Of a stretch of 64,000 bases of DNA, positions 7,770-46,690 are shown piece by piece. Both the position numbers and the translations under genes were made by a program. Position 1 is the first letter of the stretch; each line of letters opens with the position of its first letter. The notes below the pieces were generated by a model. The model was not told where the DNA came from. It worked only from the letters and a program-made list of their open reading frames with translations, and made no database searches. Location: positions 194,358 to 258,357 of IMG/VR virus record IMGVR_UViG_3300023083_000001. One strand, 5' to 3'.

Positions 7770-9749
7770 ATGAGCAATAACGACGATTTCCAAACACGTA
7801 GCGACAGCCAACCCGAGGGCCGTCAGCCACGCCAGGAATCCCAAAGCAACGACCGTGCACAAGCCCGCGACGAGCGCCCTCGTCAAAGCCAACGCAATGA
7901 CGGTGAGCAAGTGACTCTGGCTGACCTCGGTCGTCTGAACGCACGTCCTGGTGTCGGTGGTCTGTCTGACGCAGCTCTGGTAGCAATGATCGAAGCTTTC
8001 GACGGCGCCAAAGCGTTCGACAAGCCAAACGTTCCTGAAGCAGTAAGCCGCAAGCGTTTCCGCGTGCTGCCACTGGATCAGAGCACTGGCCGTACGTCAC
8101 TGTCCAGCCTCCTGGTCGTTCTGCCGACCGAAATCGCTGGCAAACTCTTCACCCTGGTTTACGTTCTGCTGATCGAACAGCCGGGCGGCCCAGGTCTGCG
8201 TACTCTGTCTGATCGTGGCGAGCAATTCGAAGCCCTGATCCTGCCAGAAGACGTGATGACCGATCGTTACATCACCGTCATCAAGAGCCAGGTTGCCAAC
8301 CTGCAAGACAACTCGAACATTCTGATCGTCGGTAGCCAAGTGCTGTTGTACAGCACCGTAGCCACCATCACCGAGAAAGAAGGTCAAGCTGCAATCGCCG
8401 CCGTCTACGACAACGCGCTCGACGCCATCTCCGGCTTCCGCGAAAACATCGTCGACGCACTGAGCGACAAACGCAACGACGGCATGCGTATCAACCCTGG
8501 CATGATTGCCCGGACTGACCGCCTGGAAGTGTCTTTCGATTACAGCGGCAAAACCATCTCCGACTCTTCGGGTCTGCCGGTGCGTTCTGACGTGACTTCT
8601 GCCCTGTACTACTCGGCAGCAGCCCCTGAAGAAGAAAACCTGTACTCCCGTACTCTGCTCGGCGAAGTCCGCGCTGGCCTGGACCTGTTCCTGACCGACG
8701 ACGGCGTCGATCGTACCATCCCAAGCTTCGGTTCGCGCCGTCGCCGCGCTGGTGGTCGTGATGAAGTGGATCAGCCATTCTGGCAGCCAGTGTTCAACAT
8801 CACTTCGATCAACTGCCCTGCTGGCATTCCGTTCTCGCTGGAACTGGCTCAGCTGTTGCTGGCCCAGGTAGCACTGCAATCCAACGACTATCGTTGGGCG
8901 AACGTGCTGCGTCCTCGTTCCACCATCGCCGGTGGTCTGAAGCCAGTCGCACAACTGTCGCACCTGCACCTGCTGAACCCGGACAAGGAAAAGGCCGCCG
9001 TCATCAACGACGTCAGCCAGAACATGTCCGATCCCGATCTGTACGACTTCCTCGACGTCACTGTCAAACCGGAAATCGTATTCGGCATGGCGATCCCTTC
9101 CAGCGGCGAGAAATCTTGGGTGCTCAGCATCTACGAGCGTATCGCACTGGCAGATCCGCGTGACGCCGAGAAACTGATCGACACCTTGTTCGCATCGGCC
9201 GACGTTCTGACCGGTGGTCGTTTCACGAAACTGTACGACGAACTCTCCAACGGCACCAACCCGTCGCCGGTTGCGGCATACGGCACTCGCGCCTTCACCG
9301 GCACCTGGACCGATACCGACGGCAACGTGCGTCCTCTGAGCGAATGGAACGTTCCGGCGGTCCTGACTTCGGTTGGCGTGAAGAACCCAGAGCTGGCTCA
9401 AGACTACCAGTACACCTTCGAAGACCGTCGTCACTCGGTCGACTACAGCTTGGCACAACGCAACGGCATCCTGTCGCGCATTGTTCCAGGTCTGCACATC
9501 GTCGGTACCTGTGAGCAACTGAGCTTCCACCCTTGGTACATCCAAGCGTTGTCTCTGGCCCTGGCTGATGCGAACATGGCATCGCTGCCAACCAGCGGTG
9601 ATGGCCTGCAACAGTCGCGTCGTGTGGGTAGCACCGACTTCTCGGCGTTCGCTACTGCGGATATCGGCTCTTCGCGCCGTCGTCCAAACGACACTGCTGA
9701 TCGTGGCCGTGGTCGCGATCGCTTCAATGGCGGTGGCAACTACTACTGA
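7770..9749 (+). CDS. chmA: Chimallin, phage nuclear shell protein (phiKZ gp54-like)
   Basis: 659 aa directly upstream of nvRNAP beta'-N; strong codon bias; AAGGAG SD; disordered termini; LELAQLLLAQ...RWANVLRP and FHPWYIQAL segments. Confidence 0.85.
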   Translation: MSNNDDFQTRSDSQPEGRQPRQESQSNDRAQARDERPRQSQRNDGEQVTLADLGRLNARPGVGGLSDAALVAMIEAFDGAKAFDKPNVPEAVSRKRFRVLPLDQSTGRTSLSSLLVVLPTEIAGKLFTLVYVLLIEQPGGPGLRTLSDRGEQFEALILPEDVMTDRYITVIKSQVANLQDNSNILIVGSQVLLYSTVATITEKEGQAAIAAVYDNALDAISGFRENIVDALSDKRNDGMRINPGMIARTDRLEVSFDYSGKTISDSSGLPVRSDVTSALYYSAAAPEEENLYSRTLLGEVRAGLDLFLTDDGVDRTIPSFGSRRRRAGGRDEVDQPFWQPVFNITSINCPAGIPFSLELAQLLLAQVALQSNDYRWANVLRPRSTIAGGLKPVAQLSHLHLLNPDKEKAAVINDVSQNMSDPDLYDFLDVTVKPEIVFGMAIPSSGEKSWVLSIYERIALADPRDAEKLIDTLFASADVLTGGRFTKLYDELSNGTNPSPVAAYGTRAFTGTWTDTDGNVRPLSEWNVPAVLTSVGVKNPELAQDYQYTFEDRRHSVDYSLAQRNGILSRIVPGLHIVGTCEQLSFHPWYIQALSLALADANMASLPTSGDGLQQSRRVGSTDFSAFATADIGSSRRRPNDTADRGRGRDRFNGGGNYY

Positions 9750-33636: not shown

Positions 33637-34929
33637 TTACCTCAAAAAGCCCTCTACATCCAGAGGGGTGGTTTTCAGTTCCTTAGCGTGGGCAGATCCC
33701 ATCATCACGGCCATCATGGTCGAGGGGATCTCGCTAATCATGGAACCGACAGAGTCGGGGTACTGGCTTACCTTGTCGCCCATGCACACGGTACAGACAT
33801 CGCCACGTGGGGTAATGCAGTAGGTGGGGGCAAAGATACCGTAGAGTTTGCCTTCGTATGTTCCCAGGTTCTCAGCGGTGATCTTGACGGGTTTACCATC
33901 GTCTAACAGCGTGCGGCCAATCCGACGTTTATCGATAATCACATCCAGTGTGTTCTTGGTACCACAGAACTCTTTGACGATCCGGGCGTTCTGGAAGATA
34001 CGTCCCATCAAGTCCACGTCTTCACCCGCCAGTGCAGTCAGAGCACCACGGTAGTAGGAACCTGCCCGCAGTGAGTTGACCATGTCTGGATACTTGGTGA
34101 CATCCAGACCTTCATCCAGAGAGTTCTTGATCAGTGTGGCGCGTCCGCCTTCAGAGAAGCCGGCCTCTGGGCCGTGAATCAGGAACATGCGTTTGAGCGC
34201 AGTGTTCAGAGACTTCTTCTTATAAAGGAATCCTTCAGCAGGATCCCCCTTTAAGTTGTTCTCTATGTAGTTTTTCACCAACGCGTCTTGAATCTTGGAC
34301 TGAGCCACTGGGTCGTCAATCTGATCCTTGTACTGCTCAAACAGTTCATCGCGCAGCTTGGTGTTGTTGGCAGGCGCTTGAAGCGACTTCTCCGTTACAG
34401 AAGGTACAAACAACTCATACCCCGCCAGGTCGCCAATAGCTTTGCCAAAGCGCAGCCAATGTTTGACGTACAACTGACCAGCGACATCCCTCCCCTCCGA
34501 AGGGTCATCCTGCATACGGTCAACGAAGATCTGTTCGATACTGCCCAAGTCAACAGGGCCGACTTGATATTCGATACGATCCTGCGCTGCGTAAACCAAC
34601 ACGCGGCTGTTGAAGATGAGATCGCCCCATGTACCATTCTCCAGATCGACCTTCAGGTTCTCAACATCACCTGCTTTGATCGGTCCGGTTTCTTCGTGGT
34701 AGATGAATGGAATCTCGTAAGGGTTAACGCCCTCAAGTGGTTGCCATTCAAAAGTCCCCGTTTCATTAGGGACATACACCTCAACGCCTTCGGGGTTGTG
34801 TTTCAACGCCCAAGGTTCTGGTTCACCACCGATGTCAATTACAACACTCATGGCACGCAACATCCATTTACGGTCGTAATGCGCTTTGGCCTTGAGAGAC
34901 CCGATAAAGTAATCGTACTTACGCATCAC
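33637..34929 (-). CDS. Virion RNAP beta' middle subunit (phiKZ gp80-like)
   Basis: NSLRAGSYYRGALTALAG (bridge-helix-like), FCGT, YCITP..DVCTVCMG, MGSAH. Confidence 0.85.
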   Translation of the reverse strand: MMRKYDYFIGSLKAKAHYDRKWMLRAMSVVIDIGGEPEPWALKHNPEGVEVYVPNETGTFEWQPLEGVNPYEIPFIYHEETGPIKAGDVENLKVDLENGTWGDLIFNSRVLVYAAQDRIEYQVGPVDLGSIEQIFVDRMQDDPSEGRDVAGQLYVKHWLRFGKAIGDLAGYELFVPSVTEKSLQAPANNTKLRDELFEQYKDQIDDPVAQSKIQDALVKNYIENNLKGDPAEGFLYKKKSLNTALKRMFLIHGPEAGFSEGGRATLIKNSLDEGLDVTKYPDMVNSLRAGSYYRGALTALAGEDVDLMGRIFQNARIVKEFCGTKNTLDVIIDKRRIGRTLLDDGKPVKITAENLGTYEGKLYGIFAPTYCITPRGDVCTVCMGDKVSQYPDSVGSMISEIPSTMMAVMMGSAHAKELKTTPLDVEGFLR

Positions 34930-40061: not shown

Positions 40062-40484
40062 CTACACGCGCAGCAGGTTTACAGCTTCAAACACTTCAGC
40101 GTTCTGGATCTTCAGTGTTTCGATCTCAGGCATCAGTTCCAGCAGCGTCTGCGAGAACGGTGCGATTTGCAGCAGGTCTGAAGCCTTGGTGTTGAACGCG
40201 ATGTTGTAACGACGCTCGTACAGACGGAAAGCGTATTCACAAGCCCGGTCCACATCGAATGGCAGCGCTTCGTTGATTTCAAACAACGCCGCACGGCAGC
40301 TGTCAGCGTTCTCTTTGAAGTAGCCACGCAGATCGCCTTGGGAGATTGGCGACGACGGCATCGGGACAACCAGCGCGCAAGCCAGTGCGAGTACCACGGT
40401 GACACGTTGACGACGGTTCTCGACCGTAATACCTTCCGGCATAGCGGAGAGGGTCGACACGATATTGATAGCGTTCATTGCCAT
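40062..40484 (-). CDS. Small head-associated protein (gp85-like position)
   Basis: 140 aa; AAGGA SD; TAATG overlap. Confidence 0.7.
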   Translation of the reverse strand: MAMNAINIVSTLSAMPEGITVENRRQRVTVVLALACALVVPMPSSPISQGDLRGYFKENADSCRAALFEINEALPFDVDRACEYAFRLYERRYNIAFNTKASDLLQIAPFSQTLLELMPEIETLKIQNAEVFEAVNLLRV

Positions 40485-41785
40485 TATCCTTTCAGAGCAG
40501 CGGAGAGTTGATACAAACGATTGTTAGCAAGTTCTTCAGTCAACTCTTGCTGACCGATTTCTTTACCACGTCCAATGACAGCGTCCAGTGAATAACGAGT
40601 GATCTTACCAAACACATCAGACCATTCGTGCTTCTCTTCCAGTAGCTTATCCAGCTCATCGATCTCGGCCAGGATCTGTTTGCGAAACGCATCGTCGAGT
40701 GAGCGATCTTTTAGAACAGTCACCAACTCACGACGTAACGCTGCAATACGCTGAGGAAGTGTGGTGTATCCACTAGACAGTGCAAAGAACGTAAACGAGT
40801 TGGTTGCCATGCCGATAGCGAAGGTAGTAGCGATCCGTTTGATCGTGGCAAGAAGGACTTTAGCTGCACCTTCGGCCACAGTAGCGAATGGCAAGGCGAC
40901 GATGTTGGAAAAGTTCATCATCAGACCAAACCACTTAGGCTCATACCCGGCTTCAGCAAAGATCCCAGCACTGCGTTCTAATTTAGTCAGACCACGTGCT
41001 AAGTCCACACCCATACCCCATCGAGCCGCGAACTGATCAGCTACAGCTTCAGCCATGCGTTGATCGTACCACCGGGTATTGAGAGCACGCTGCATCCGAG
41101 TAACTTGACCTTCAAGCACCATCGCCACTACTTCAGCGCTGGTTACATCCTCACGCAGTGACTTGTCAACTTCAGCCAAACGCAGAGCAGCCTTACCGAC
41201 CCACATGCGTTTCTCAAGGGTTTCCTGATTGTCCATCCGACCCACTACTTCAGCCAGGATGTAGTTGGTGATCAACGTTTGCCCGAGGTATTCGTAGTAG
41301 GTGTAACAGTGACCCAACTCGTGGAAGTAAAAACCTGCCACTTCACCCGCTGTGAAATACCCGTCAAAGAATGACGGCGTGATCAAGAACTCGTTGGTCA
41401 ACTTGCTGAAGAACCCACCCACTTTAGCCATCTTCAAATCAACGTAACCGTCGATGATCTGATTGCCATTCATGTTATCCAAATCAAACTTGGCTAACAG
41501 CTTCTCTGCACGTGGGTTCAGTGGGGACAGTGCATTGAGATTAGGAACCATCGCCGCAACGTGATAAGGGCCACGCAGGAATGCCTTCTTAGTGAAGTAA
41601 GGCTTAAAACGAATACCTGTGGCGTCTAACGTCAGCTGGGCGATCTCGTTCAGATACCTCTCAATGAGGTGCAGTTCACCGTTAGCCGTCATTGCCTGTT
41701 GAAACAGTTTGGTCACGCGTTTCGGGTACTCGGCGTTCGTCTGAAAGGCAATCGCTTCCATCGACTCCTGTAGCGTAAGTGTCAT
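40484..41785 (-). CDS. Virion protein with M48-like zinc metalloprotease motif (gp84-like position)
   Basis: FHELGH, downstream EAVADQFAARWG, hydrophobic stretch; N-terminal SME site; ATG 41785 after GGAG. Confidence 0.7.
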   Translation of the reverse strand: MTLTLQESMEAIAFQTNAEYPKRVTKLFQQAMTANGELHLIERYLNEIAQLTLDATGIRFKPYFTKKAFLRGPYHVAAMVPNLNALSPLNPRAEKLLAKFDLDNMNGNQIIDGYVDLKMAKVGGFFSKLTNEFLITPSFFDGYFTAGEVAGFYFHELGHCYTYYEYLGQTLITNYILAEVVGRMDNQETLEKRMWVGKAALRLAEVDKSLREDVTSAEVVAMVLEGQVTRMQRALNTRWYDQRMAEAVADQFAARWGMGVDLARGLTKLERSAGIFAEAGYEPKWFGLMMNFSNIVALPFATVAEGAAKVLLATIKRIATTFAIGMATNSFTFFALSSGYTTLPQRIAALRRELVTVLKDRSLDDAFRKQILAEIDELDKLLEEKHEWSDVFGKITRYSLDAVIGRGKEIGQQELTEELANNRLYQLSAALKG

Positions 41786-41848
41786 GATAGTAGCTCCATA
41801 AGCCACGGTGGGAATCATCCCATTTGCAGTACAAATCTAATTGGTAGA

Positions 41849-41887: not shown

Positions 41888-43699
41888 ATGTCCATTCCTA
41901 CTACTGCGGCTGAGATTGACAAGTATATTTTGTCACTCCCCAAAGAAAGAATTGTTGCACGTGAATGTAAGCATGCCACGTATACCACTCACCGTAATGG
42001 TGAACGGGCAGACATGCTGGTTATCAAGGAATATCTGATCCTGGATGACGGTACGCGTATTCCACGCATCCGTAATGTCGAGAATTACCAACGACCTTAT
42101 TGGGTCACCAAGCCACACTTTCGTACCCACCCAGACAAGATCCAGTTTGAAGATCTGTCACGTCTTGACATGTTCAAGTCACCGCAATGTAAGTTGCGTC
42201 AAGACATCTGCATGCGCTTAGGTCACGGTAACCCGTCGAACCCGATCAAGATGCTGGCACGTTCACCATTCTTGTACGGGCTGGATCCAGGTCCTGAAGT
42301 CTTCCTGAAACAAAGTTACATGACCAAGTGGCCTGATTCGTTTGCACCTAACCGTGTCACCGTGATCGATGCCGAGACCGATGTGAACGGCGCACTGCAC
42401 AAGAAGTTACAATTGCCGATCTGCTGGTCACTCGTCAGCGATGATGAGATTGTTCTGTATGGTAATCAGGAATGGACGTACGACATTCCCAACTACGCCG
42501 AGCAGGTGTTGGCTGAGTACAAAGAAGTCATCGGTCAATGGGTCGAGATGATCCGTGAAACGTTGAAAGAAAAGAAAGGCGAGAACAAAGGTAAGTATCC
42601 AGAGTGGGTAGACCTGATCGAGAAGATTCCGGTGCGTGTTGAAATGTTGAAGAACGACTTCGCCATTACTAAAGGCATGGTCGATCGGCTACATGAAACC
42701 CAACCCGACATCGTCACAGGCTGGAACGTATTCTTTGATGCGAAAGTCATCGAGACGTCCATCGTCAATGCCGGACAAGATCCAGCTGACGTGTTGAGTG
42801 ATCCTCGTGTTCCGTTTGAGTACCGTGGCGCATTGTTGCGAGAAGGTCAGCGTGACAAACTGACGGCGTCTGGTCGTAAGATGCAGCTCGATCCACAGGA
42901 ACGTTGGAACGTTGTGCTCAACACAGCCTCCTGGCGTATGCTCGACGCGATGCAGGTGTATTGGCAGTTGCGTAAGGCAAAGGGTAAGGAATCTGGCGGT
43001 TACGGCTTAGACGCGATTCTAGGACGTCAACTCAAAACCGGTAAGTTGAAGTACGCTACAGAAGACACCATGGTTCCACCGGGTACGCTTCACTGGCACA
43101 TGGACATGCAGAAGAACTACAAGGTCCGATACGGTGTGTACAACATCATCGACTCCTTGGGTGTATGGGTGTTGGATAAGAAGAACAACGACTTGTCTTC
43201 ACAAGTCAGTTCGTTGGCAGGCCCTGCCGACTACTCTAACTTCAACTCACAACCGCGTGTCAACGCCACCGACATGCTCTTCAGCGTCTTGAAGATGCGT
43301 AAGAAAGTGATCTGTTCGACGTCCGACCAGATGGCTGATGAGAACGACAAGCTGGTAACCGGTAAGGACGGGTGGATTATCACCTTCCCCTCACACAACG
43401 TCGTGGACTCAGGTCTGTTCTTGTTTGAGGACATGCCGAACGTTCAATCAATGATCCACATGTTCAACGCGGATGCTGACGTTGAAACGACATACCCCAC
43501 TGCTGAGATCATTCAGAACCTTTCCAAGGAGACGACAATCGCAGAACCATGCAGGGTGATGGGAGTGGGTCGAGAAGCATTGCGTCTCGCCAGTGTCAAC
43601 ATGACAGGTGGTCGAGGCAATGCCGTTGAGATCATCGAAACCATTTGCAAGATGCCCACGTTTGATCAGTGGGTAGAGTTAGCCAAAGAAAAGATGTGA
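41888..43699 (+). CDS. Family B DNA polymerase, N-terminal half: 3'-5' exonuclease plus motif A (phiKZ gp82-like)
   Basis: ExoI DAETD, ExoII GWNVFFD, ExoIII YNIID; motif A-like DADVETTYP. Confidence 0.88.
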   Translation: MSIPTTAAEIDKYILSLPKERIVARECKHATYTTHRNGERADMLVIKEYLILDDGTRIPRIRNVENYQRPYWVTKPHFRTHPDKIQFEDLSRLDMFKSPQCKLRQDICMRLGHGNPSNPIKMLARSPFLYGLDPGPEVFLKQSYMTKWPDSFAPNRVTVIDAETDVNGALHKKLQLPICWSLVSDDEIVLYGNQEWTYDIPNYAEQVLAEYKEVIGQWVEMIRETLKEKKGENKGKYPEWVDLIEKIPVRVEMLKNDFAITKGMVDRLHETQPDIVTGWNVFFDAKVIETSIVNAGQDPADVLSDPRVPFEYRGALLREGQRDKLTASGRKMQLDPQERWNVVLNTASWRMLDAMQVYWQLRKAKGKESGGYGLDAILGRQLKTGKLKYATEDTMVPPGTLHWHMDMQKNYKVRYGVYNIIDSLGVWVLDKKNNDLSSQVSSLAGPADYSNFNSQPRVNATDMLFSVLKMRKKVICSTSDQMADENDKLVTGKDGWIITFPSHNVVDSGLFLFEDMPNVQSMIHMFNADADVETTYPTAEIIQNLSKETTIAEPCRVMGVGREALRLASVNMTGGRGNAVEIIETICKMPTFDQWVELAKEKM

Positions 43700-43756: not shown

Positions 43757-46690
43757 TTACGTACTGGCGTGACGCTTGAAGTTCACTTCGATCGAGTCGA
43801 TCACCGCGAAGGTTCCGTCTGGTTGATTCAACAACGATTTTGCAATGCAGAACCGTGAGGATTCATCCAGGATGGTAACCACGTTGTAATCGTTCTCAGG
43901 ACCACCCAGGCCGGACAGATGGATGCTGACGATGTCAGTACCCGCCTTGGCACGGATAGCGCTCTCGAGCGTGTTACGGGAGATCACGGTAGCATCCAGA
44001 CCAGCCACTGCTTCTGCAATAGCCGTAGCCTCGAGAGACTTACGGATGTCGTTATCACCGTACACTTCTTTGCTGACGTAGAAATCAATCGTCAACGATT
44101 GCGCCGTATGCAGCGTCTTCAGTTCGCTGTCCTCAACCAGACAGTCAACAAACTTCAACGTGTTACGCGGTTGGAAGTACAGATCGGTACGTTCGATGAG
44201 ATTCTCACGCACAGCGCCTAAGGTCTCGTTGATCCAGGTCACCAGGATCTTCGGTGCTTCAGCAGTGTAGGTCGAATCATTGATGTCCGTCGCGTAACGA
44301 TAGACCGCATCGAAGAGCACCACGTCCCACCAACGAATGATGTTACGCTCTGATTCCATGATCGGATTGCCGTTCTCATCGAGGACAGCTTCACCGGCCC
44401 TATGCCGCATTTCCTGCACACCGTCCGCATTGAGGACAGGATCGCCCTTAGCGAATTTGACCTTGAGGTGTTTGTCGGCACCCGTACCTTCGATGATCAC
44501 CTGGTTGTTAGCGTCAGTGGCGTAAACGTTCTGCAAGTAGAACTTGGGAACATCCACTTGATAGGTCAGATACTTTCTCAGACCGATCATGCTGCGAGCA
44601 CGAGCCCACAGACCTGACATCTCATCACCCAGCACCACCGAGATGGTTTCGTGGTACACGCCAATCGATCCATCAGGCAACAGGAACTTACCCACTGCAT
44701 CATCCACCGGCATTTTAGTAGCACCGACGACAGTGTAGTCACTCACCGACCAGATCAAATGGAAATCTTGATGCAGGACGGTAGGGTAAGCTCGTTCGAT
44801 AGGTTCGTACATGCTGAAGTTGGTCAGGGTCAACAAGTGATCCTTGGTGATGTCCCATCTCGTGCTCAGCTTGAACTCAAACCAACGTTCGCCATCGGAG
44901 CCTTTGGTGATCTGCACACCGTTGATGTACGCAAGGTCGCTTTCGCCATCGGGGTAGTACGCCAACTGCACATGCACCTGATCGTCACGCAGCGCTTGCC
45001 AAGCGGCATTGGAGCTACTCTTGATCTGGATCACGTAACCATCTTCATTACGAGTAATTGTTTCACTCGTACTGGAACTGATGGTCAGCCCCAAGGTGTC
45101 GTTACTGGCCATGTAGGACGTAACGTCTAACGTTGGTGCGTTGAGGAAGTAAGGACGTGCATGGAACTCGTTCTCACCAATGTCCAACACGTAATGCAGC
45201 GGCGTGTACAGGTAAGTGCCATCGCTGATGGTGTTCACCTTGGCATCACCTGTCAACAACTCGAGCGCACGACGATCAGCGTCTGAAACAATCTTCAAGA
45301 CCCCGTCAGTGTTGCGATACAAAGTCTGAGGTGTCACGGTAAACCGTGTGCCGTTGTCAATGACCGTGTCCATGTTCACGATGTCACTGATTGCAGTCTT
45401 CATCGTGATAACAGCCGAGTCGATCCCGGTGCTAGCCTGACCCGCTGGGTTGGACGGCATTGCACGTGTCGCCAGGTACGTACGGTTGGTCACGTCATCG
45501 ATGTTCATGATCACATCGAAACCCAGTTCGGCTAACTGAGTCCCCATCTGAGCATCACTGATCGGCAAGACCGAATCGCCAACCGAGTTGGTGAGTACAC
45601 GTTGACGACGTTCTTCAAACGACGGCGCAGCTGCACCACCTGTCACGATATCCGTGGAGAAGATGCTAACAGTAGCCATCACGGTCAGAGGTGCGTAGTA
45701 GATCGCGTTGTCGTCTTCATCCAGGTCGCGCCATGTGGCGACGTAGTTGGTCGGCTCCAGACCCGAGAGCGACAGGTTCATCGGTCCCTTGGTAGTGTAG
45801 ACATCCACCCGGATATCACGCGTAGTCAGATCGGTTGCGTAATACACATAGGGCAGTTCAATCGTTAACTCACCATCTATGACCTTATACAGCAAGGTTG
45901 GATCGGTAGGGTCGAATACTTGTTGGCTGCGAGTGGTCTTGATCTCAGACCACAGCCCTGACGACAAACGGCTGAACGCACGAACGTAATAGAAGTCATC
46001 GGTCAACGTCAACACTTTCTTCAGCGACTTCGAGGCGCTCAAGCTGTACTGGTAAGACGTCAGGAGCATCTGTTTAAGGAACACCCTCAAACGCACCATA
46101 ACGACGTGTCCGCCGTTATTATCGGTGATGCCAGTCGTTACCAGACTCCAATCGACTTTGTTCCCACGCAGCGTTTGCAGAGGCGACAACTGACTGCCGT
46201 CATACACGACATCAATAGCACCGTGCGTCTTGACCAGGAAGTTAATCGGATACTGAAAGGTAAAGGCTGCATTGTTGACCACGATCTGCGTGTGTTTAGG
46301 GATGGTCAGTTTCTTGGTCCCAGTCGTCCCCACACGCACAGCGTTCTGCAAGATCTCGTCACGAGAGATGTAGATGTCAAACCACGTCCCGGCAGGCGTT
46401 GCAAACATCCCCTCGTAATCTTTGTCGGACAAGTGATAGTAAAGATCATCATCTTCCACCGCCATGACTGAATACTGACGGGTGTTCAGAATCTCATCGC
46501 GCTGTACAGCGCCTGCGGTCATCAACACAGAGGCTTCGATCAAGTGAGGGAAAGGCATCGATGGATCGACCATCAACACTTCACCATCAAACGCAGCTTC
46601 CAGGTTTTCCATCATCAAGCTGTTGAGCCGAGTAGGCTCGTAACGGATCTCAGCCATGGCAGCCAAAAGCTGAGTAGAAGTAATTGTCAT
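43757..46690 (-). CDS. Baseplate wedge protein, T4 gp6/baseplate-J-like (phiKZ gp87-like)
   Basis: 977 aa; TGGAAAPSFEERRQRVL matches the baseplate-J GG.D.E..E..R.R pattern. Confidence 0.72.
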   Translation of the reverse strand: MTITSTQLLAAMAEIRYEPTRLNSLMMENLEAAFDGEVLMVDPSMPFPHLIEASVLMTAGAVQRDEILNTRQYSVMAVEDDDLYYHLSDKDYEGMFATPAGTWFDIYISRDEILQNAVRVGTTGTKKLTIPKHTQIVVNNAAFTFQYPINFLVKTHGAIDVVYDGSQLSPLQTLRGNKVDWSLVTTGITDNNGGHVVMVRLRVFLKQMLLTSYQYSLSASKSLKKVLTLTDDFYYVRAFSRLSSGLWSEIKTTRSQQVFDPTDPTLLYKVIDGELTIELPYVYYATDLTTRDIRVDVYTTKGPMNLSLSGLEPTNYVATWRDLDEDDNAIYYAPLTVMATVSIFSTDIVTGGAAAPSFEERRQRVLTNSVGDSVLPISDAQMGTQLAELGFDVIMNIDDVTNRTYLATRAMPSNPAGQASTGIDSAVITMKTAISDIVNMDTVIDNGTRFTVTPQTLYRNTDGVLKIVSDADRRALELLTGDAKVNTISDGTYLYTPLHYVLDIGENEFHARPYFLNAPTLDVTSYMASNDTLGLTISSSTSETITRNEDGYVIQIKSSSNAAWQALRDDQVHVQLAYYPDGESDLAYINGVQITKGSDGERWFEFKLSTRWDITKDHLLTLTNFSMYEPIERAYPTVLHQDFHLIWSVSDYTVVGATKMPVDDAVGKFLLPDGSIGVYHETISVVLGDEMSGLWARARSMIGLRKYLTYQVDVPKFYLQNVYATDANNQVIIEGTGADKHLKVKFAKGDPVLNADGVQEMRHRAGEAVLDENGNPIMESERNIIRWWDVVLFDAVYRYATDINDSTYTAEAPKILVTWINETLGAVRENLIERTDLYFQPRNTLKFVDCLVEDSELKTLHTAQSLTIDFYVSKEVYGDNDIRKSLEATAIAEAVAGLDATVISRNTLESAIRAKAGTDIVSIHLSGLGGPENDYNVVTILDESSRFCIAKSLLNQPDGTFAVIDSIEVNFKRHAST

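What the first reader, a model, noticed from the sequence alone, without database searches (positions are those of the whole stretch)
40484..41785. Virion protein with a complete M48-like zinc protease signature
Seen: FHELGH, a downstream EAVAD, a long hydrophobic stretch (GLMMNFSNIVALPF...TFAIGMATNSFTFFAL) and an N-terminal SME site. Established: HExxH plus E..AD marks M48-type gluzincins, and S/A/G-x-E is the phiKZ head protease site. Inference: this may be a packaged, possibly ejected, membrane-associated protease acting at entry or early-vesicle formation, separate from the prohead protease.
Basis: partly seen in the sequence, partly recalled or inferred. Interest (0 to 1): 0.62.

Follow-up and report, generated by a model that had tools for sequence, protein, structure and literature searches.

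The report
Head-packaged M48-like zinc protease, jumbo phage
This gene of a chimallin-encoding jumbo phage encodes a distant but intact relative of M48 zinc proteases; its counterparts in phiKZ and SPN3US are packaged in the phage head and trimmed by the head protease, and its job is still unknown.

Summary
The 433-aa minus-strand ORF (40484-41785) carries HELGH (155-159), EAVAD (246-250), SME (8-10) and a hydrophobic helical hairpin (about 284-338). These are not chance motifs. In 149 diverse relatives (21-47% identity) only G124, H155, E156, H159, E246, D250 and R346 are invariant. A family profile hits ZMPSTE24 at E 2.6e-5 with both zinc motifs in register. A domain model (pLDDT 89) has only four PDB matches with Z of 8 or more, and all four are M48 peptidases.

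The protein is the ortholog of phiKZ gp84, PhiPA3 gp086 and SPN3US gp45. These are head proteins, and SPN3US gp45 is cut by the prohead protease at ASE-20, the column that aligns with SME-10 here. The window's genome encodes a separate gp175-type prohead protease and a chimallin homolog.

Packaging in the head and processing at SME-10 are inferred from orthologs. Ejection, membrane insertion and substrate remain inference. The hairpin is TM-grade in most of the family but only borderline here.

This is a new member of a known virion-protein family (phrog_2767). A few GenBank records already label it M48-like, but the literature lists it as "Head, unknown function". Interest is moderate.

The parts
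40484..41785 (-). Gene for the 433-aa M48-like head protein (stop codon 40484-40486); ortholog of phiKZ gp84 / SPN3US gp45 / PhiPA3 gp086; phrog_2767
   Evidence: ORF list and translation. PHROG match at 2e-66 over the full length. tblastn finds 185 jumbo phage records. Annotated orthologs.
41756..41785 (-). Predicted 10-residue N-terminal propeptide ending in the S-M-E prohead-protease site (SME at 41756-41764); cleavage would follow E10
   Evidence: E10 is present in 147/149 relatives, P3 is S/A/G in 138/149, and the median propeptide length is 11 aa. E10 aligns with E20 of SPN3US gp45, where cleavage at ASE-20 was found by MS (PMC10052503 Table 2). Cleavage in this phage is inferred.
41793..41796 (-). 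GGAG Shine-Dalgarno-like element 8 nt upstream of the ATG at 41785
   Evidence: Sequence read directly.
41309..41323 (-). HELGH (aa 155-159): two zinc-ligand histidines and the catalytic glutamate
   Evidence: Invariant H155, E156 and H159 in 149 representatives. Aligned to ZMPSTE24 HELGH 335-339.
41036..41050 (-). EAVAD (aa 246-250): third zinc ligand Glu and the gluzincin Asp four residues on
   Evidence: Invariant E246 and D250. Aligned to ZMPSTE24 E415..D419.
40916..41755 (-). Protease domain of the mature protein (aa 11-290): two N-terminal helices, small beta-sheet with invariant G124, HExxH helix, ExxAD helix
   Evidence: Domain model with pLDDT 89.1. VIA-align top four hits are ZMPSTE24, Ste24p, BepA and 3c37, with Z 10.9-8.4.
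40772..40936 (-). Hydrophobic helical hairpin (aa 284-338), placed after the ExxAD helix; family-specific
   Evidence: Most hydrophobic region in 97% of 149 relatives. KD19 is 1.6 or more in 82%, but only 1.68 here. Modelled as helices 284-296, 300-305 and 307-336 in full-length numbering.
40487..40759 (-). C-terminal helical region (aa 343-433) with invariant R346 and the conserved LANNRLY-type motif near the end
   Evidence: R346 is invariant, and E417, N422 and L424 are at least 90% conserved. Its role is unknown.
40062..40484 (-). Downstream 140-aa gene, start overlapping the stop of the protease gene (TAATG); positional counterpart of phiKZ gp85 / SPN3US gp46
   Evidence: Sequence read directly. 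A 140-151 aa gene sits in the same position in all phages inspected. Only weak shared PHROG hits support homology, so homology is not established.
41888..43699 (+). Divergently transcribed DNA polymerase (phiKZ gp82-like), the conserved syntenic neighbour
   Evidence: phrog_3011 at 1e-165. The same arrangement is seen in PhiPA3, Goslar, SPN3US and Proteus phage 7.

Best explanation
The gene encodes a catalytically intact, highly diverged member of the M48 zinc metalloprotease lineage. The family is a core virion protein of phiKZ-like jumbo phages (phiKZ gp84, SPN3US gp45).

Shown here:
- The M48 fold is present.
- All zinc-binding and catalytic residues are strictly conserved.
- The family has a uniform architecture of about 430 aa.
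- An N-terminal (S/A/G)-x-E site is conserved across the family.

Shown in orthologs by others:
- The protein is in the head.
- Its short N-terminal propeptide is removed by the separate prohead serine protease.

Inferred mechanism:
1. The 48.8-kDa precursor is recruited into the prohead.
2. The gp175-type protease of this genome cuts after E10.
3. The 47.6-kDa mature enzyme stays latent among the internal head proteins.
4. It leaves with the DNA and uses its hydrophobic helical hairpin to associate with the host inner membrane.
5. There it cleaves a host envelope or membrane protein, or a co-ejected phage protein, during genome delivery.

My probabilities are about 0.9 for 'genuine M48-type protease homolog', about 0.8 for 'head-packaged and cut at SME-10 in this phage', and about 0.35-0.4 for 'ejected and acting at the membrane at entry'.
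For: Sequence evidence:
- HExxH and ExxAD are invariant in 29, 13 and 149-sequence alignments, out to phiKZ, Goslar, SPN3US and a Bacillus phage.
- The family profile against PDB sequences gives ZMPSTE24 E 2.6e-5 and Ste24p 6.8e-4, with both motifs in register.
- 36 of 135 members hit Pfam PF01435 at E of 0.01 or less (best 1.9e-6), and no other family recurs.
- hhalign to E. coli HtpX gives 79% probability, and to three periplasmic M48s 88%.
- The Moabite GenBank note records HHpred 98% to HtpX 3CQB.

Fold evidence:
- For the domain model (pLDDT 89.1, pTM 0.87), only 4 of 48,161 chains reach Z of 8 or more, and all are M48. They are 6bh8 (10.9, 187 aligned), 4il3 (10.5, 192 aligned), 6sar (9.4, 137 aligned, rmsd 3.8) and 3c37 (8.4). 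The next hit is at 6.4.

Packaging and processing:
- phiKZ gp84 is annotated 'structural head protein'.
- SPN3US gp45 is cut at ASE-20 in virions and heads (PMC10052503 Table 2; PMC5694885). E20 aligns with E10 here.
- A gp175 homolog is present in the same genome.

Importance:
- The family has 2,378 clusters at 50% identity.
- phiKZ orf84 has 0 filtered transposon insertions in 1,242 bp, against one per 42 bp genome-wide (10.1101/2025.11.23.690004).

Membrane idea:
- The hairpin is the most hydrophobic region in 97% of members, with median KD19 2.08.

Against action inside the head:
- SPN3US MS found only A-x-E cleavages, and the protease-null mutant lacks normal head-protein cleavage.
Against: - The window protein itself gives no Pfam M48 hit, and Foldseek E-values are not significant. 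Family membership therefore rests on profile and fold evidence at remote-homology level.
- No data show ejection, membrane insertion, zinc binding or proteolysis for any member.
- The hairpin is only borderline hydrophobic in this clade (median KD19 1.55). It could instead be buried in the fold or in an oligomer.
- The phiKZ TnSeq 'essential' call may be confounded by polar or insertion effects. The neighbours orf85-86 also lacked insertions yet tolerate deletion.
- Virion presence in this uncultivated phage is inferred from orthologs only.
Confidence: 0.6

Rival explanations
1. Auxiliary maturation peptidase acting inside the prohead. After the serine prohead protease cuts at S/A/G-x-E, the M48-like enzyme would degrade released propeptide or scaffold fragments into small peptides that can leave the capsid. 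It would have no role after ejection.
For: - Orthologs are located in the head and have a short propeptide comparable in length to T4 capsid-targeting sequences.
- Jumbo phage heads shed very large propeptide masses, with propeptides of 111-254 residues in SPN3US.
- M48 enzymes generally act on unfolded peptides or tails (established knowledge of Ste24, HtpX and BepA).
Against: - In SPN3US every cleavage site found by semi-specific MS fits A-x-E.
- Prohead-protease amber mutants lack the normal head-protein cleavages and undergo no head maturation. This leaves no visible footprint of a second endopeptidase.
- The idea does not explain the conserved hydrophobic hairpin.
Confidence: 0.2
2. Structural or scaffolding head protein that keeps an M48-derived fold but no longer acts as an enzyme (pseudo-protease).
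For: - Most records call it only 'virion structural protein'.
- The sequence is too diverged for Pfam to recognise in this protein.
- No activity has been reported.
Against: - Of 433 positions only seven are invariant across 149 representatives at 21-47% identity. Five of these are exactly the zinc ligands, the catalytic Glu and the gluzincin Asp.
- Pseudo-enzymes normally lose such residues.
Confidence: 0.1
3. Intracellular (non-virion) membrane protease in this particular phage. It would act late in the infected cell, for example on host membrane proteins or in lysis timing, rather than being packaged.
For: - Virion presence is not measured for this uncultivated phage.
- Cellular M48 relatives such as HtpX are membrane quality-control proteases (established knowledge).
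- A hydrophobic hairpin is present.
Against: - Orthologs in three experimentally studied phages are head or virion proteins.
- The prohead-protease site is invariant in this clade.
- The gene sits in the conserved block next to genes whose phiKZ counterparts are head proteins.
Confidence: 0.05
4. Chance co-occurrence of short motifs in an unrelated helical protein.
For: - HExxH is a short motif.
- Foldseek gives no significant hit.
Against: - The motif pair occurs in 22 of 200,000 shuffles.
- The motif residues are invariant family-wide.
- Profile and fold searches both converge on M48.
Confidence: 0.02

Closest known systems
phiKZ gp84 / PhiPA3 gp086 / 201phi2-1 gp145 / SPN3US gp45 head-protein family (phrog_2767)
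   Same: - Full-length collinear homology: PHROG 2e-66, and 17-25% identity to the named members with the same invariant residues.
- Same size.
- Same gene neighbourhood, beside the DNA polymerase and followed by a ~145-aa and a larger gene.
- Same N-terminal prohead-protease site, cut at ASE-20 in gp45.
   Different: - The propeptide is shorter (10 versus 20 residues in gp45).
- The hydrophobic hairpin is weaker (KD19 1.68 versus 2.1-2.5 in phiKZ, PhiPA3, Goslar, Moabite and AgentSmith).
- This protein belongs to a metagenomic clade with at most 63% identity to anything in the databases searched.
Ste24p / ZMPSTE24 (M48A integral-membrane CAAX proteases)
   Same: - Best structural matches: Z 10.9 and 10.5 with about 190 aligned residues.
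- Significant profile match with HELGH onto 335-339 and ExxAD onto 415-419.
   Different: - There is no seven-helix transmembrane chamber.
- Identity is only 14-15%, and rmsd is high (7.9-8.7 A) over the long alignment.
- The phage protein has a single hydrophobic hairpin placed after the third ligand, plus a C-terminal helical extension.
BepA/YfgC, LoiP, YcaL and the soluble M48 peptidase 3c37 (periplasmic or lipoprotein M48 enzymes); HtpX
   Same: - Core protease domain superposes: BepA Z 9.4 at rmsd 3.8 A over 137 residues, and 3c37 Z 8.4.
- hhalign is local to the strand-helix-HExxH block.
- Some phage orthologs are auto-annotated as BepA-like or M48 lipoprotein protease.
   Different: - There is no signal peptide, lipobox or TPR domain.
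- HtpX has its hydrophobic hairpin between HExxH and the third ligand (from established knowledge), not after it.
- The phage protein is delivered in a capsid and processed by a phage serine protease.
T4 internal proteins with capsid-targeting sequences, and phiKZ/SPN3US ejection proteins
   Same: A short N-terminal propeptide is removed by the prohead protease. The SPN3US authors compare its length to T4 capsid-targeting sequences (PMC5694885). The proteins are located in the head.
   Different: No sequence or fold relation. Targeting function and ejection have not been shown for this family.

Membership tests
Peptidase family M48 (MEROPS M48 / Pfam PF01435) | HExxH zinc-binding and catalytic motif on a helix | tested here: met
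   HELGH at aa 155-159 lies in helix 146-183 of the model. H, E and H are invariant in 149 relatives.
Peptidase family M48 (MEROPS M48 / Pfam PF01435) | Third zinc ligand Glu in an ExxAD helix downstream of HExxH | tested here: met
   EAVAD is at 246-250. E246 and D250 are invariant. They align to ZMPSTE24 E415..D419.
Peptidase family M48 (MEROPS M48 / Pfam PF01435) | Significant match to the family's sequence model | tested here: inconclusive
   - The window protein has no PF01435 hit at E up to 10.
- Among relatives, 12/29 and 36/135 hit it (best 1.9e-6).
- Moabite scores 20.4 bits against a cut-off of 20.3.
- The family profile hits ZMPSTE24 at E 2.6e-5.
- Membership therefore holds at the level of the protein's family, not of this sequence alone.
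Peptidase family M48 (MEROPS M48 / Pfam PF01435) | M48 protease-domain fold | tested here: met
   The only four chains with Z of 8 or more among 48,161 are M48 (Z 10.9, 10.5, 9.4, 8.4); the next hit is 6.4. The Foldseek top ranks are also ZMPSTE24, but at E 0.13.
Peptidase family M48 (MEROPS M48 / Pfam PF01435) | Zinc-dependent peptidase activity | not testable with these tools
   No biochemical data for any member were found in the library.
phiKZ gp84 / SPN3US gp45 head-protein family (phrog_2767) | Full-length homology to the family model | tested here: met
   phrog_2767 at E 2e-66, covering residues 5-432 against profile positions 10-439 of 442. Alignment with named members.
phiKZ gp84 / SPN3US gp45 head-protein family (phrog_2767) | Conserved genomic position beside the DNA polymerase, followed by a ~145-aa gene | tested here: met
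   Window genes at 41888-43699 (+), 40484-41785 (-) and 40062-40484 (-). The same order is seen in PhiPA3, Goslar, Moabite, SPN3US and L016.
phiKZ gp84 / SPN3US gp45 head-protein family (phrog_2767) | N-terminal propeptide removed by the prohead protease at (S/A/G)-x-E | tested here: inconclusive
   The site is present and aligned with the experimentally cut ASE-20 of gp45. It is conserved in 147/149 members. A gp175 homolog is in the genome. Actual cleavage in this phage cannot be tested here.
phiKZ gp84 / SPN3US gp45 head-protein family (phrog_2767) | Presence in the virion head | not testable with these tools
   Known only for orthologs. This phage is an uncultivated IMG/VR record.
Prohead maturation protease (phiKZ gp175 / SPN3US gp245 type) | Homology to gp175 | tested here: not met
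   The gp175 homolog of this genome lies at G000:165810-166382, outside the window (E 3.1e-22). The M48-like protein is a different, single-copy gene.
M56 BlaR1/MecR1-type and other gluzincin families (M13, minigluzincins) | Closer fold match than to M48 | tested here: not met
   BlaR1 Z 5.3, M13 enzymes Z about 5.7-6.1, and abylysin/selecase Z 5.6-6.4. All are well below the M48 hits.

The most novel reading that the evidence does not exclude
The gp84/gp45 family is an ejected, membrane-inserting M48 protease. Its catalytic activity would be required at the very start of jumbo-phage infection, for example to cut a host inner-membrane or periplasmic protein, or a co-ejected phage protein, so that the genome and virion RNA polymerase can enter and the membrane-bound early infection vesicle can form. 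That would be the first enzymatic activity assigned to the entry step of chimallin-encoding phages.
Probability: 0.25. Interest if true: 0.8.

Novelty: new member of a known kind. Interest (0 to 1): 0.5.

Why it matters
- phiKZ-like jumbo phages package dozens of head proteins whose functions are unknown, and how their genome crosses the envelope and becomes enclosed in an early vesicle is an open question.
- This family is one of the few such proteins with a recognisable and evidently preserved enzymatic site.
- It is very widespread (2,378 clusters at 50% identity), and it took no transposon insertions in phiKZ.
- The primary proteomics literature still lists it as "Head, unknown function".
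- A catalytic point mutant in a tractable phage (phiKZ, SPN3US or Goslar) would test directly whether a second, zinc-dependent protease is needed for infectivity, and at which step.
- For this window itself, the result mainly gives a secure annotation.

Tried and rejected
- Foldseek against the PDB gave no significant match with the full-length model or the domain model, although ZMPSTE24 ranked first for the domain.
- The full-length model (pLDDT 74) gave M48 hits only at noise level, Z 6-7. The result became clear only after refolding residues 11-360 with 135 diverse sequences.
- phmmer of the single protein against PDB sequences found nothing relevant.
- NCBIfam gave only sub-threshold noise.
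- The search for related loci with the very diverse alignment A2 failed for lack of a conserved stretch. A1 worked.
- hhalign against single E. coli M48 sequences or a 3-sequence profile aligned only the HExxH block. I could not assemble a deep cellular M48 profile.
- Pfam S77 (T4 gp21 type) found no prohead protease in the genome. A direct search with phiKZ gp175 did.
- BLASTP of the two downstream genes against phiKZ gp85/gp86 and SPN3US gp47 gave nothing. PHROG cross-hits for the small gene are weak.
- A search for chimallin in Moabite and AgentSmith with phiKZ gp54 found nothing. At that divergence this is not evidence of absence, so whether the family extends beyond chimallin-encoding phages is left open.
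- Literature searches for gp84, PHIKZ084, gp084, gp145, M48 and metalloprotease found no functional study.
- The Mol Microbiol 2012 phiKZ proteolysis paper is not held, so the phiKZ gp84 cleavage site itself could not be checked.
- Complex prediction, the look-up of sequencing runs and read laying were not used, because no claim here depends on them.
Full report
**What is there.**
The finding lies on the minus strand. The open frame runs from 41818 to 40484 (444 aa), but the second ATG at 41785 is the likely start. It has a GGAG 8 nt upstream, and every homolog begins at the corresponding position. The product has 433 aa (48.8 kDa). It contains:
- SME at residues 8-10;
- HELGH at 155-159;
- EAVAD at 246-250;
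- a hydrophobic stretch at about 284-338;
- a helical C-terminal region ending in a conserved LANNRLY-type motif.

The stop codon overlaps the start of a 140-aa gene (TAATG). A DNA polymerase gene is transcribed divergently upstream. The window belongs to a complete 258,357-bp virus record with terminal repeats. That record encodes a chimallin homolog inside the window and a phiKZ gp175-type head maturation protease outside it. The phage is therefore a phiKZ-like, chimallin-encoding jumbo phage.

**Is the signature real?**
By itself the protein matches no Pfam peptidase family. It matches only phrog_2767, of unknown function, at 2e-66. Conservation settles the question.
- In 29 metagenomic homologs (23-63% identity), H155, E156, H159, E246 and D250 are invariant.
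- The same holds in an alignment reaching phiKZ, PhiPA3, Goslar, Moabite, an SPN3US-type phage (Proteus phage 7) and a Bacillus jumbo phage, at 17-25% identity.
- An exhaustive profile search found 2,378 clusters at 50% identity (785 at E of 1e-30 or less). The best 150 were 406-481 aa long apart from two fragments.
- In 149 of these representatives (21-47% identity to the query) only seven columns are invariant: G124, H155, E156, H159, E246, D250 and R346.
- The motif pair arises in 22 of 200,000 composition-preserving shuffles.

**Relation to M48.**
- A profile of the domain (residues 11-360, 135 sequences) hits human ZMPSTE24 at E 2.6e-5 and yeast Ste24p at 6.8e-4 among PDB sequences. The HELGH block aligns to 335-339 and the ExxAD helix to 415-419. 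From established knowledge, these are the zinc ligands H335, H339 and E415 and the catalytic E336.
- 36 of 135 members individually touch Pfam Peptidase_M48 (best 1.9e-6), and no other family recurs.
- The first full-length model (pLDDT 74) gave only noise-level hits.
- The domain model built on the deeper alignment reached pLDDT 89.1 and pTM 0.87. In an exhaustive comparison with 48,161 chains only four reached Z of 8 or more, and all are M48 peptidases:

| Chain | Protein | Z | Aligned residues |
|---|---|---|---|
| 6bh8 | ZMPSTE24 | 10.9 | 187 |
| 4il3 | Ste24p | 10.5 | 192 |
| 6sar | BepA | 9.4 | 137 (rmsd 3.8 A) |
| 3c37 | putative M48 peptidase | 8.4 | 141 |

- The next match is at Z 6.4. 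Other gluzincins and M56 BlaR1 lie at 5-6.
- Foldseek ranks ZMPSTE24 first, but without significance.
- hhalign against E. coli HtpX, and against three periplasmic M48 enzymes, aligns only the strand-helix-HExxH block, at 79% and 88% probability.
- The ESM Atlas neighbours are viral hypothetical clusters, followed by M48-tagged clusters.
- The GenBank record of Serratia phage Moabite already notes an HHpred match to HtpX. A few other records carry BepA-like or peptidase labels.

I conclude that this is a genuine, very diverged M48-lineage protease domain with an intact active site.

**Virion location and processing.**
Annotated orthologs are phiKZ gp84 ("structural head protein"), PhiPA3 gp086 ("virion structural protein", equated there with 201phi2-1 gp145 and EL gp52) and SPN3US gp45. 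For SPN3US, mass spectrometry of virions and purified heads shows that the prohead protease gp245 cuts gp45 at ASE-20. This takes the protein from 50.3 to 48.2 kDa, and it is listed as "Head, unknown function" (PMC10052503, Table 2). An earlier paper compares this 20-residue propeptide with the capsid-targeting sequences of T4 (PMC5694885). E20 of gp45 falls in the same alignment column as E10 of the window protein.

Across 149 relatives:
- that column is E in 147;
- P3 is S, A or G in 138;
- P1' is A or S in 131;
- the implied propeptide has a median length of 11 residues.

Cleavage in this phage is inferred.

**The hydrophobic hairpin.**
The segment between the ExxAD helix and the invariant R346 is the most hydrophobic part of 97% of the relatives. 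Its 19-residue Kyte-Doolittle maximum is 1.6 or more in 82% and 2.0 or more in 55% (median 2.08). The rest of the protein reaches 1.6 in under 5%. In phiKZ, PhiPA3, Goslar, Moabite and AgentSmith it is clearly TM-grade (2.1-2.5). In the window's own clade it is borderline (median 1.55, and 1.68 here). The model shows a kinked helix followed by a 30-residue helix. From established knowledge of HtpX and Ste24, its position after the third ligand differs from the transmembrane segments of those enzymes. It is a feature of the phage family.

**Function.**
Nothing in the searchable literature assigns a function.
- In phiKZ transposon sequencing, orf84 has no filtered insertions in 1,242 bp, at a genome-wide density of one per 42 bp (10.1101/2025.11.23.690004).
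- The authors warn of polar effects, and they show that orf85-86, which also lacked insertions, tolerate deletion.
- In SPN3US all cleavage sites detected conform to A-x-E, and prohead-protease mutants lack normal head-protein cleavage. This argues against the M48-like enzyme acting broadly on head proteins.
- Together with the hairpin, this makes a latent, packaged enzyme that acts after ejection the best-supported reading. That step is still inference.
- The main rival is a clean-up peptidase inside the maturing head. A pseudo-enzyme is unlikely given the pattern of invariance.

**Novelty and verdict.**
The protein is a new, divergent member (63% identity or less to anything found) of a known virion-protein family whose M48 likeness has been recorded in a few database annotations but never studied. 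Interest is moderate (0.5). If the entry-protease reading were shown, it would matter considerably for understanding how chimallin-encoding phages begin infection.

Noticed in passing
window 7770-9749 (+): A 659-aa ORF is a chimallin (phiKZ gp54 nuclear shell protein) homolog: 23% identity over residues 23-598, E 1.6e-10. This places the phage among chimallin-encoding, presumably nucleus-forming jumbo phages.
   Followed up: partly
window 40062-40484 (-): A 140-aa gene is translationally coupled to the protease gene (TAATG). A gene of 140-151 aa occupies this position in every related phage inspected (phiKZ gp85, SPN3US gp46 and others), yet sequence similarity is almost gone. Only weak shared PHROG hits and an invariant Arg remain. 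It could be a fast-evolving partner of the protease; binding was not tested.
   Followed up: partly
window 41726-41755 (-), aa 11-20: The residues just after the predicted cleavage site are unusually conserved: A11 is A or S in 131/149, and Q15 is at least 90% conserved. They are modelled with high confidence (block mean pLDDT 93) as an extended, non-helical segment. Whether the new N-terminus lies in the active-site cleft (latency or activation) could not be checked without coordinates.
   Followed up: no
window 40748-40750 (-), aa R346: R346 lies just after the hairpin, in a Y-D-x-P-x-x-R type motif. It is one of only seven invariant residues in the family, and its role is unexplained.
   Followed up: no
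window 33637-34929 (-) and 43757-46690 (-): The neighbouring genes match phiKZ-type core virion genes. One is an RNA polymerase beta-subunit fragment (phrog_2962, 5e-102). The other is a 977-aa protein (phrog_3248, 2e-275) in the position of phiKZ gp87, which the phiKZ TnSeq preprint calls a putative baseplate wedge protein.
   Followed up: no
window 41786-41818 (-): An in-frame upstream ATG would add 11 residues (444-aa ORF). No homolog extends that far and the ATG has no obvious ribosome-binding site, so automatic callers may mis-start the gene.
   Followed up: yes
literature: PMC10052503, discussion versus Table 2: The discussion text swaps the propeptide lengths of gp225 and gp45 (20 and 24). 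Table 2 and the results text give gp45 ASE-20 and gp225 ARE-24.
   Followed up: yes
literature: PMC13434306: The ejected giant RNA polymerase of phage N4 has a C-terminal subdomain with a conserved HExxH motif. This is a possible parallel case of a zincin-like module carried into the cell by an ejection protein.
   Followed up: no
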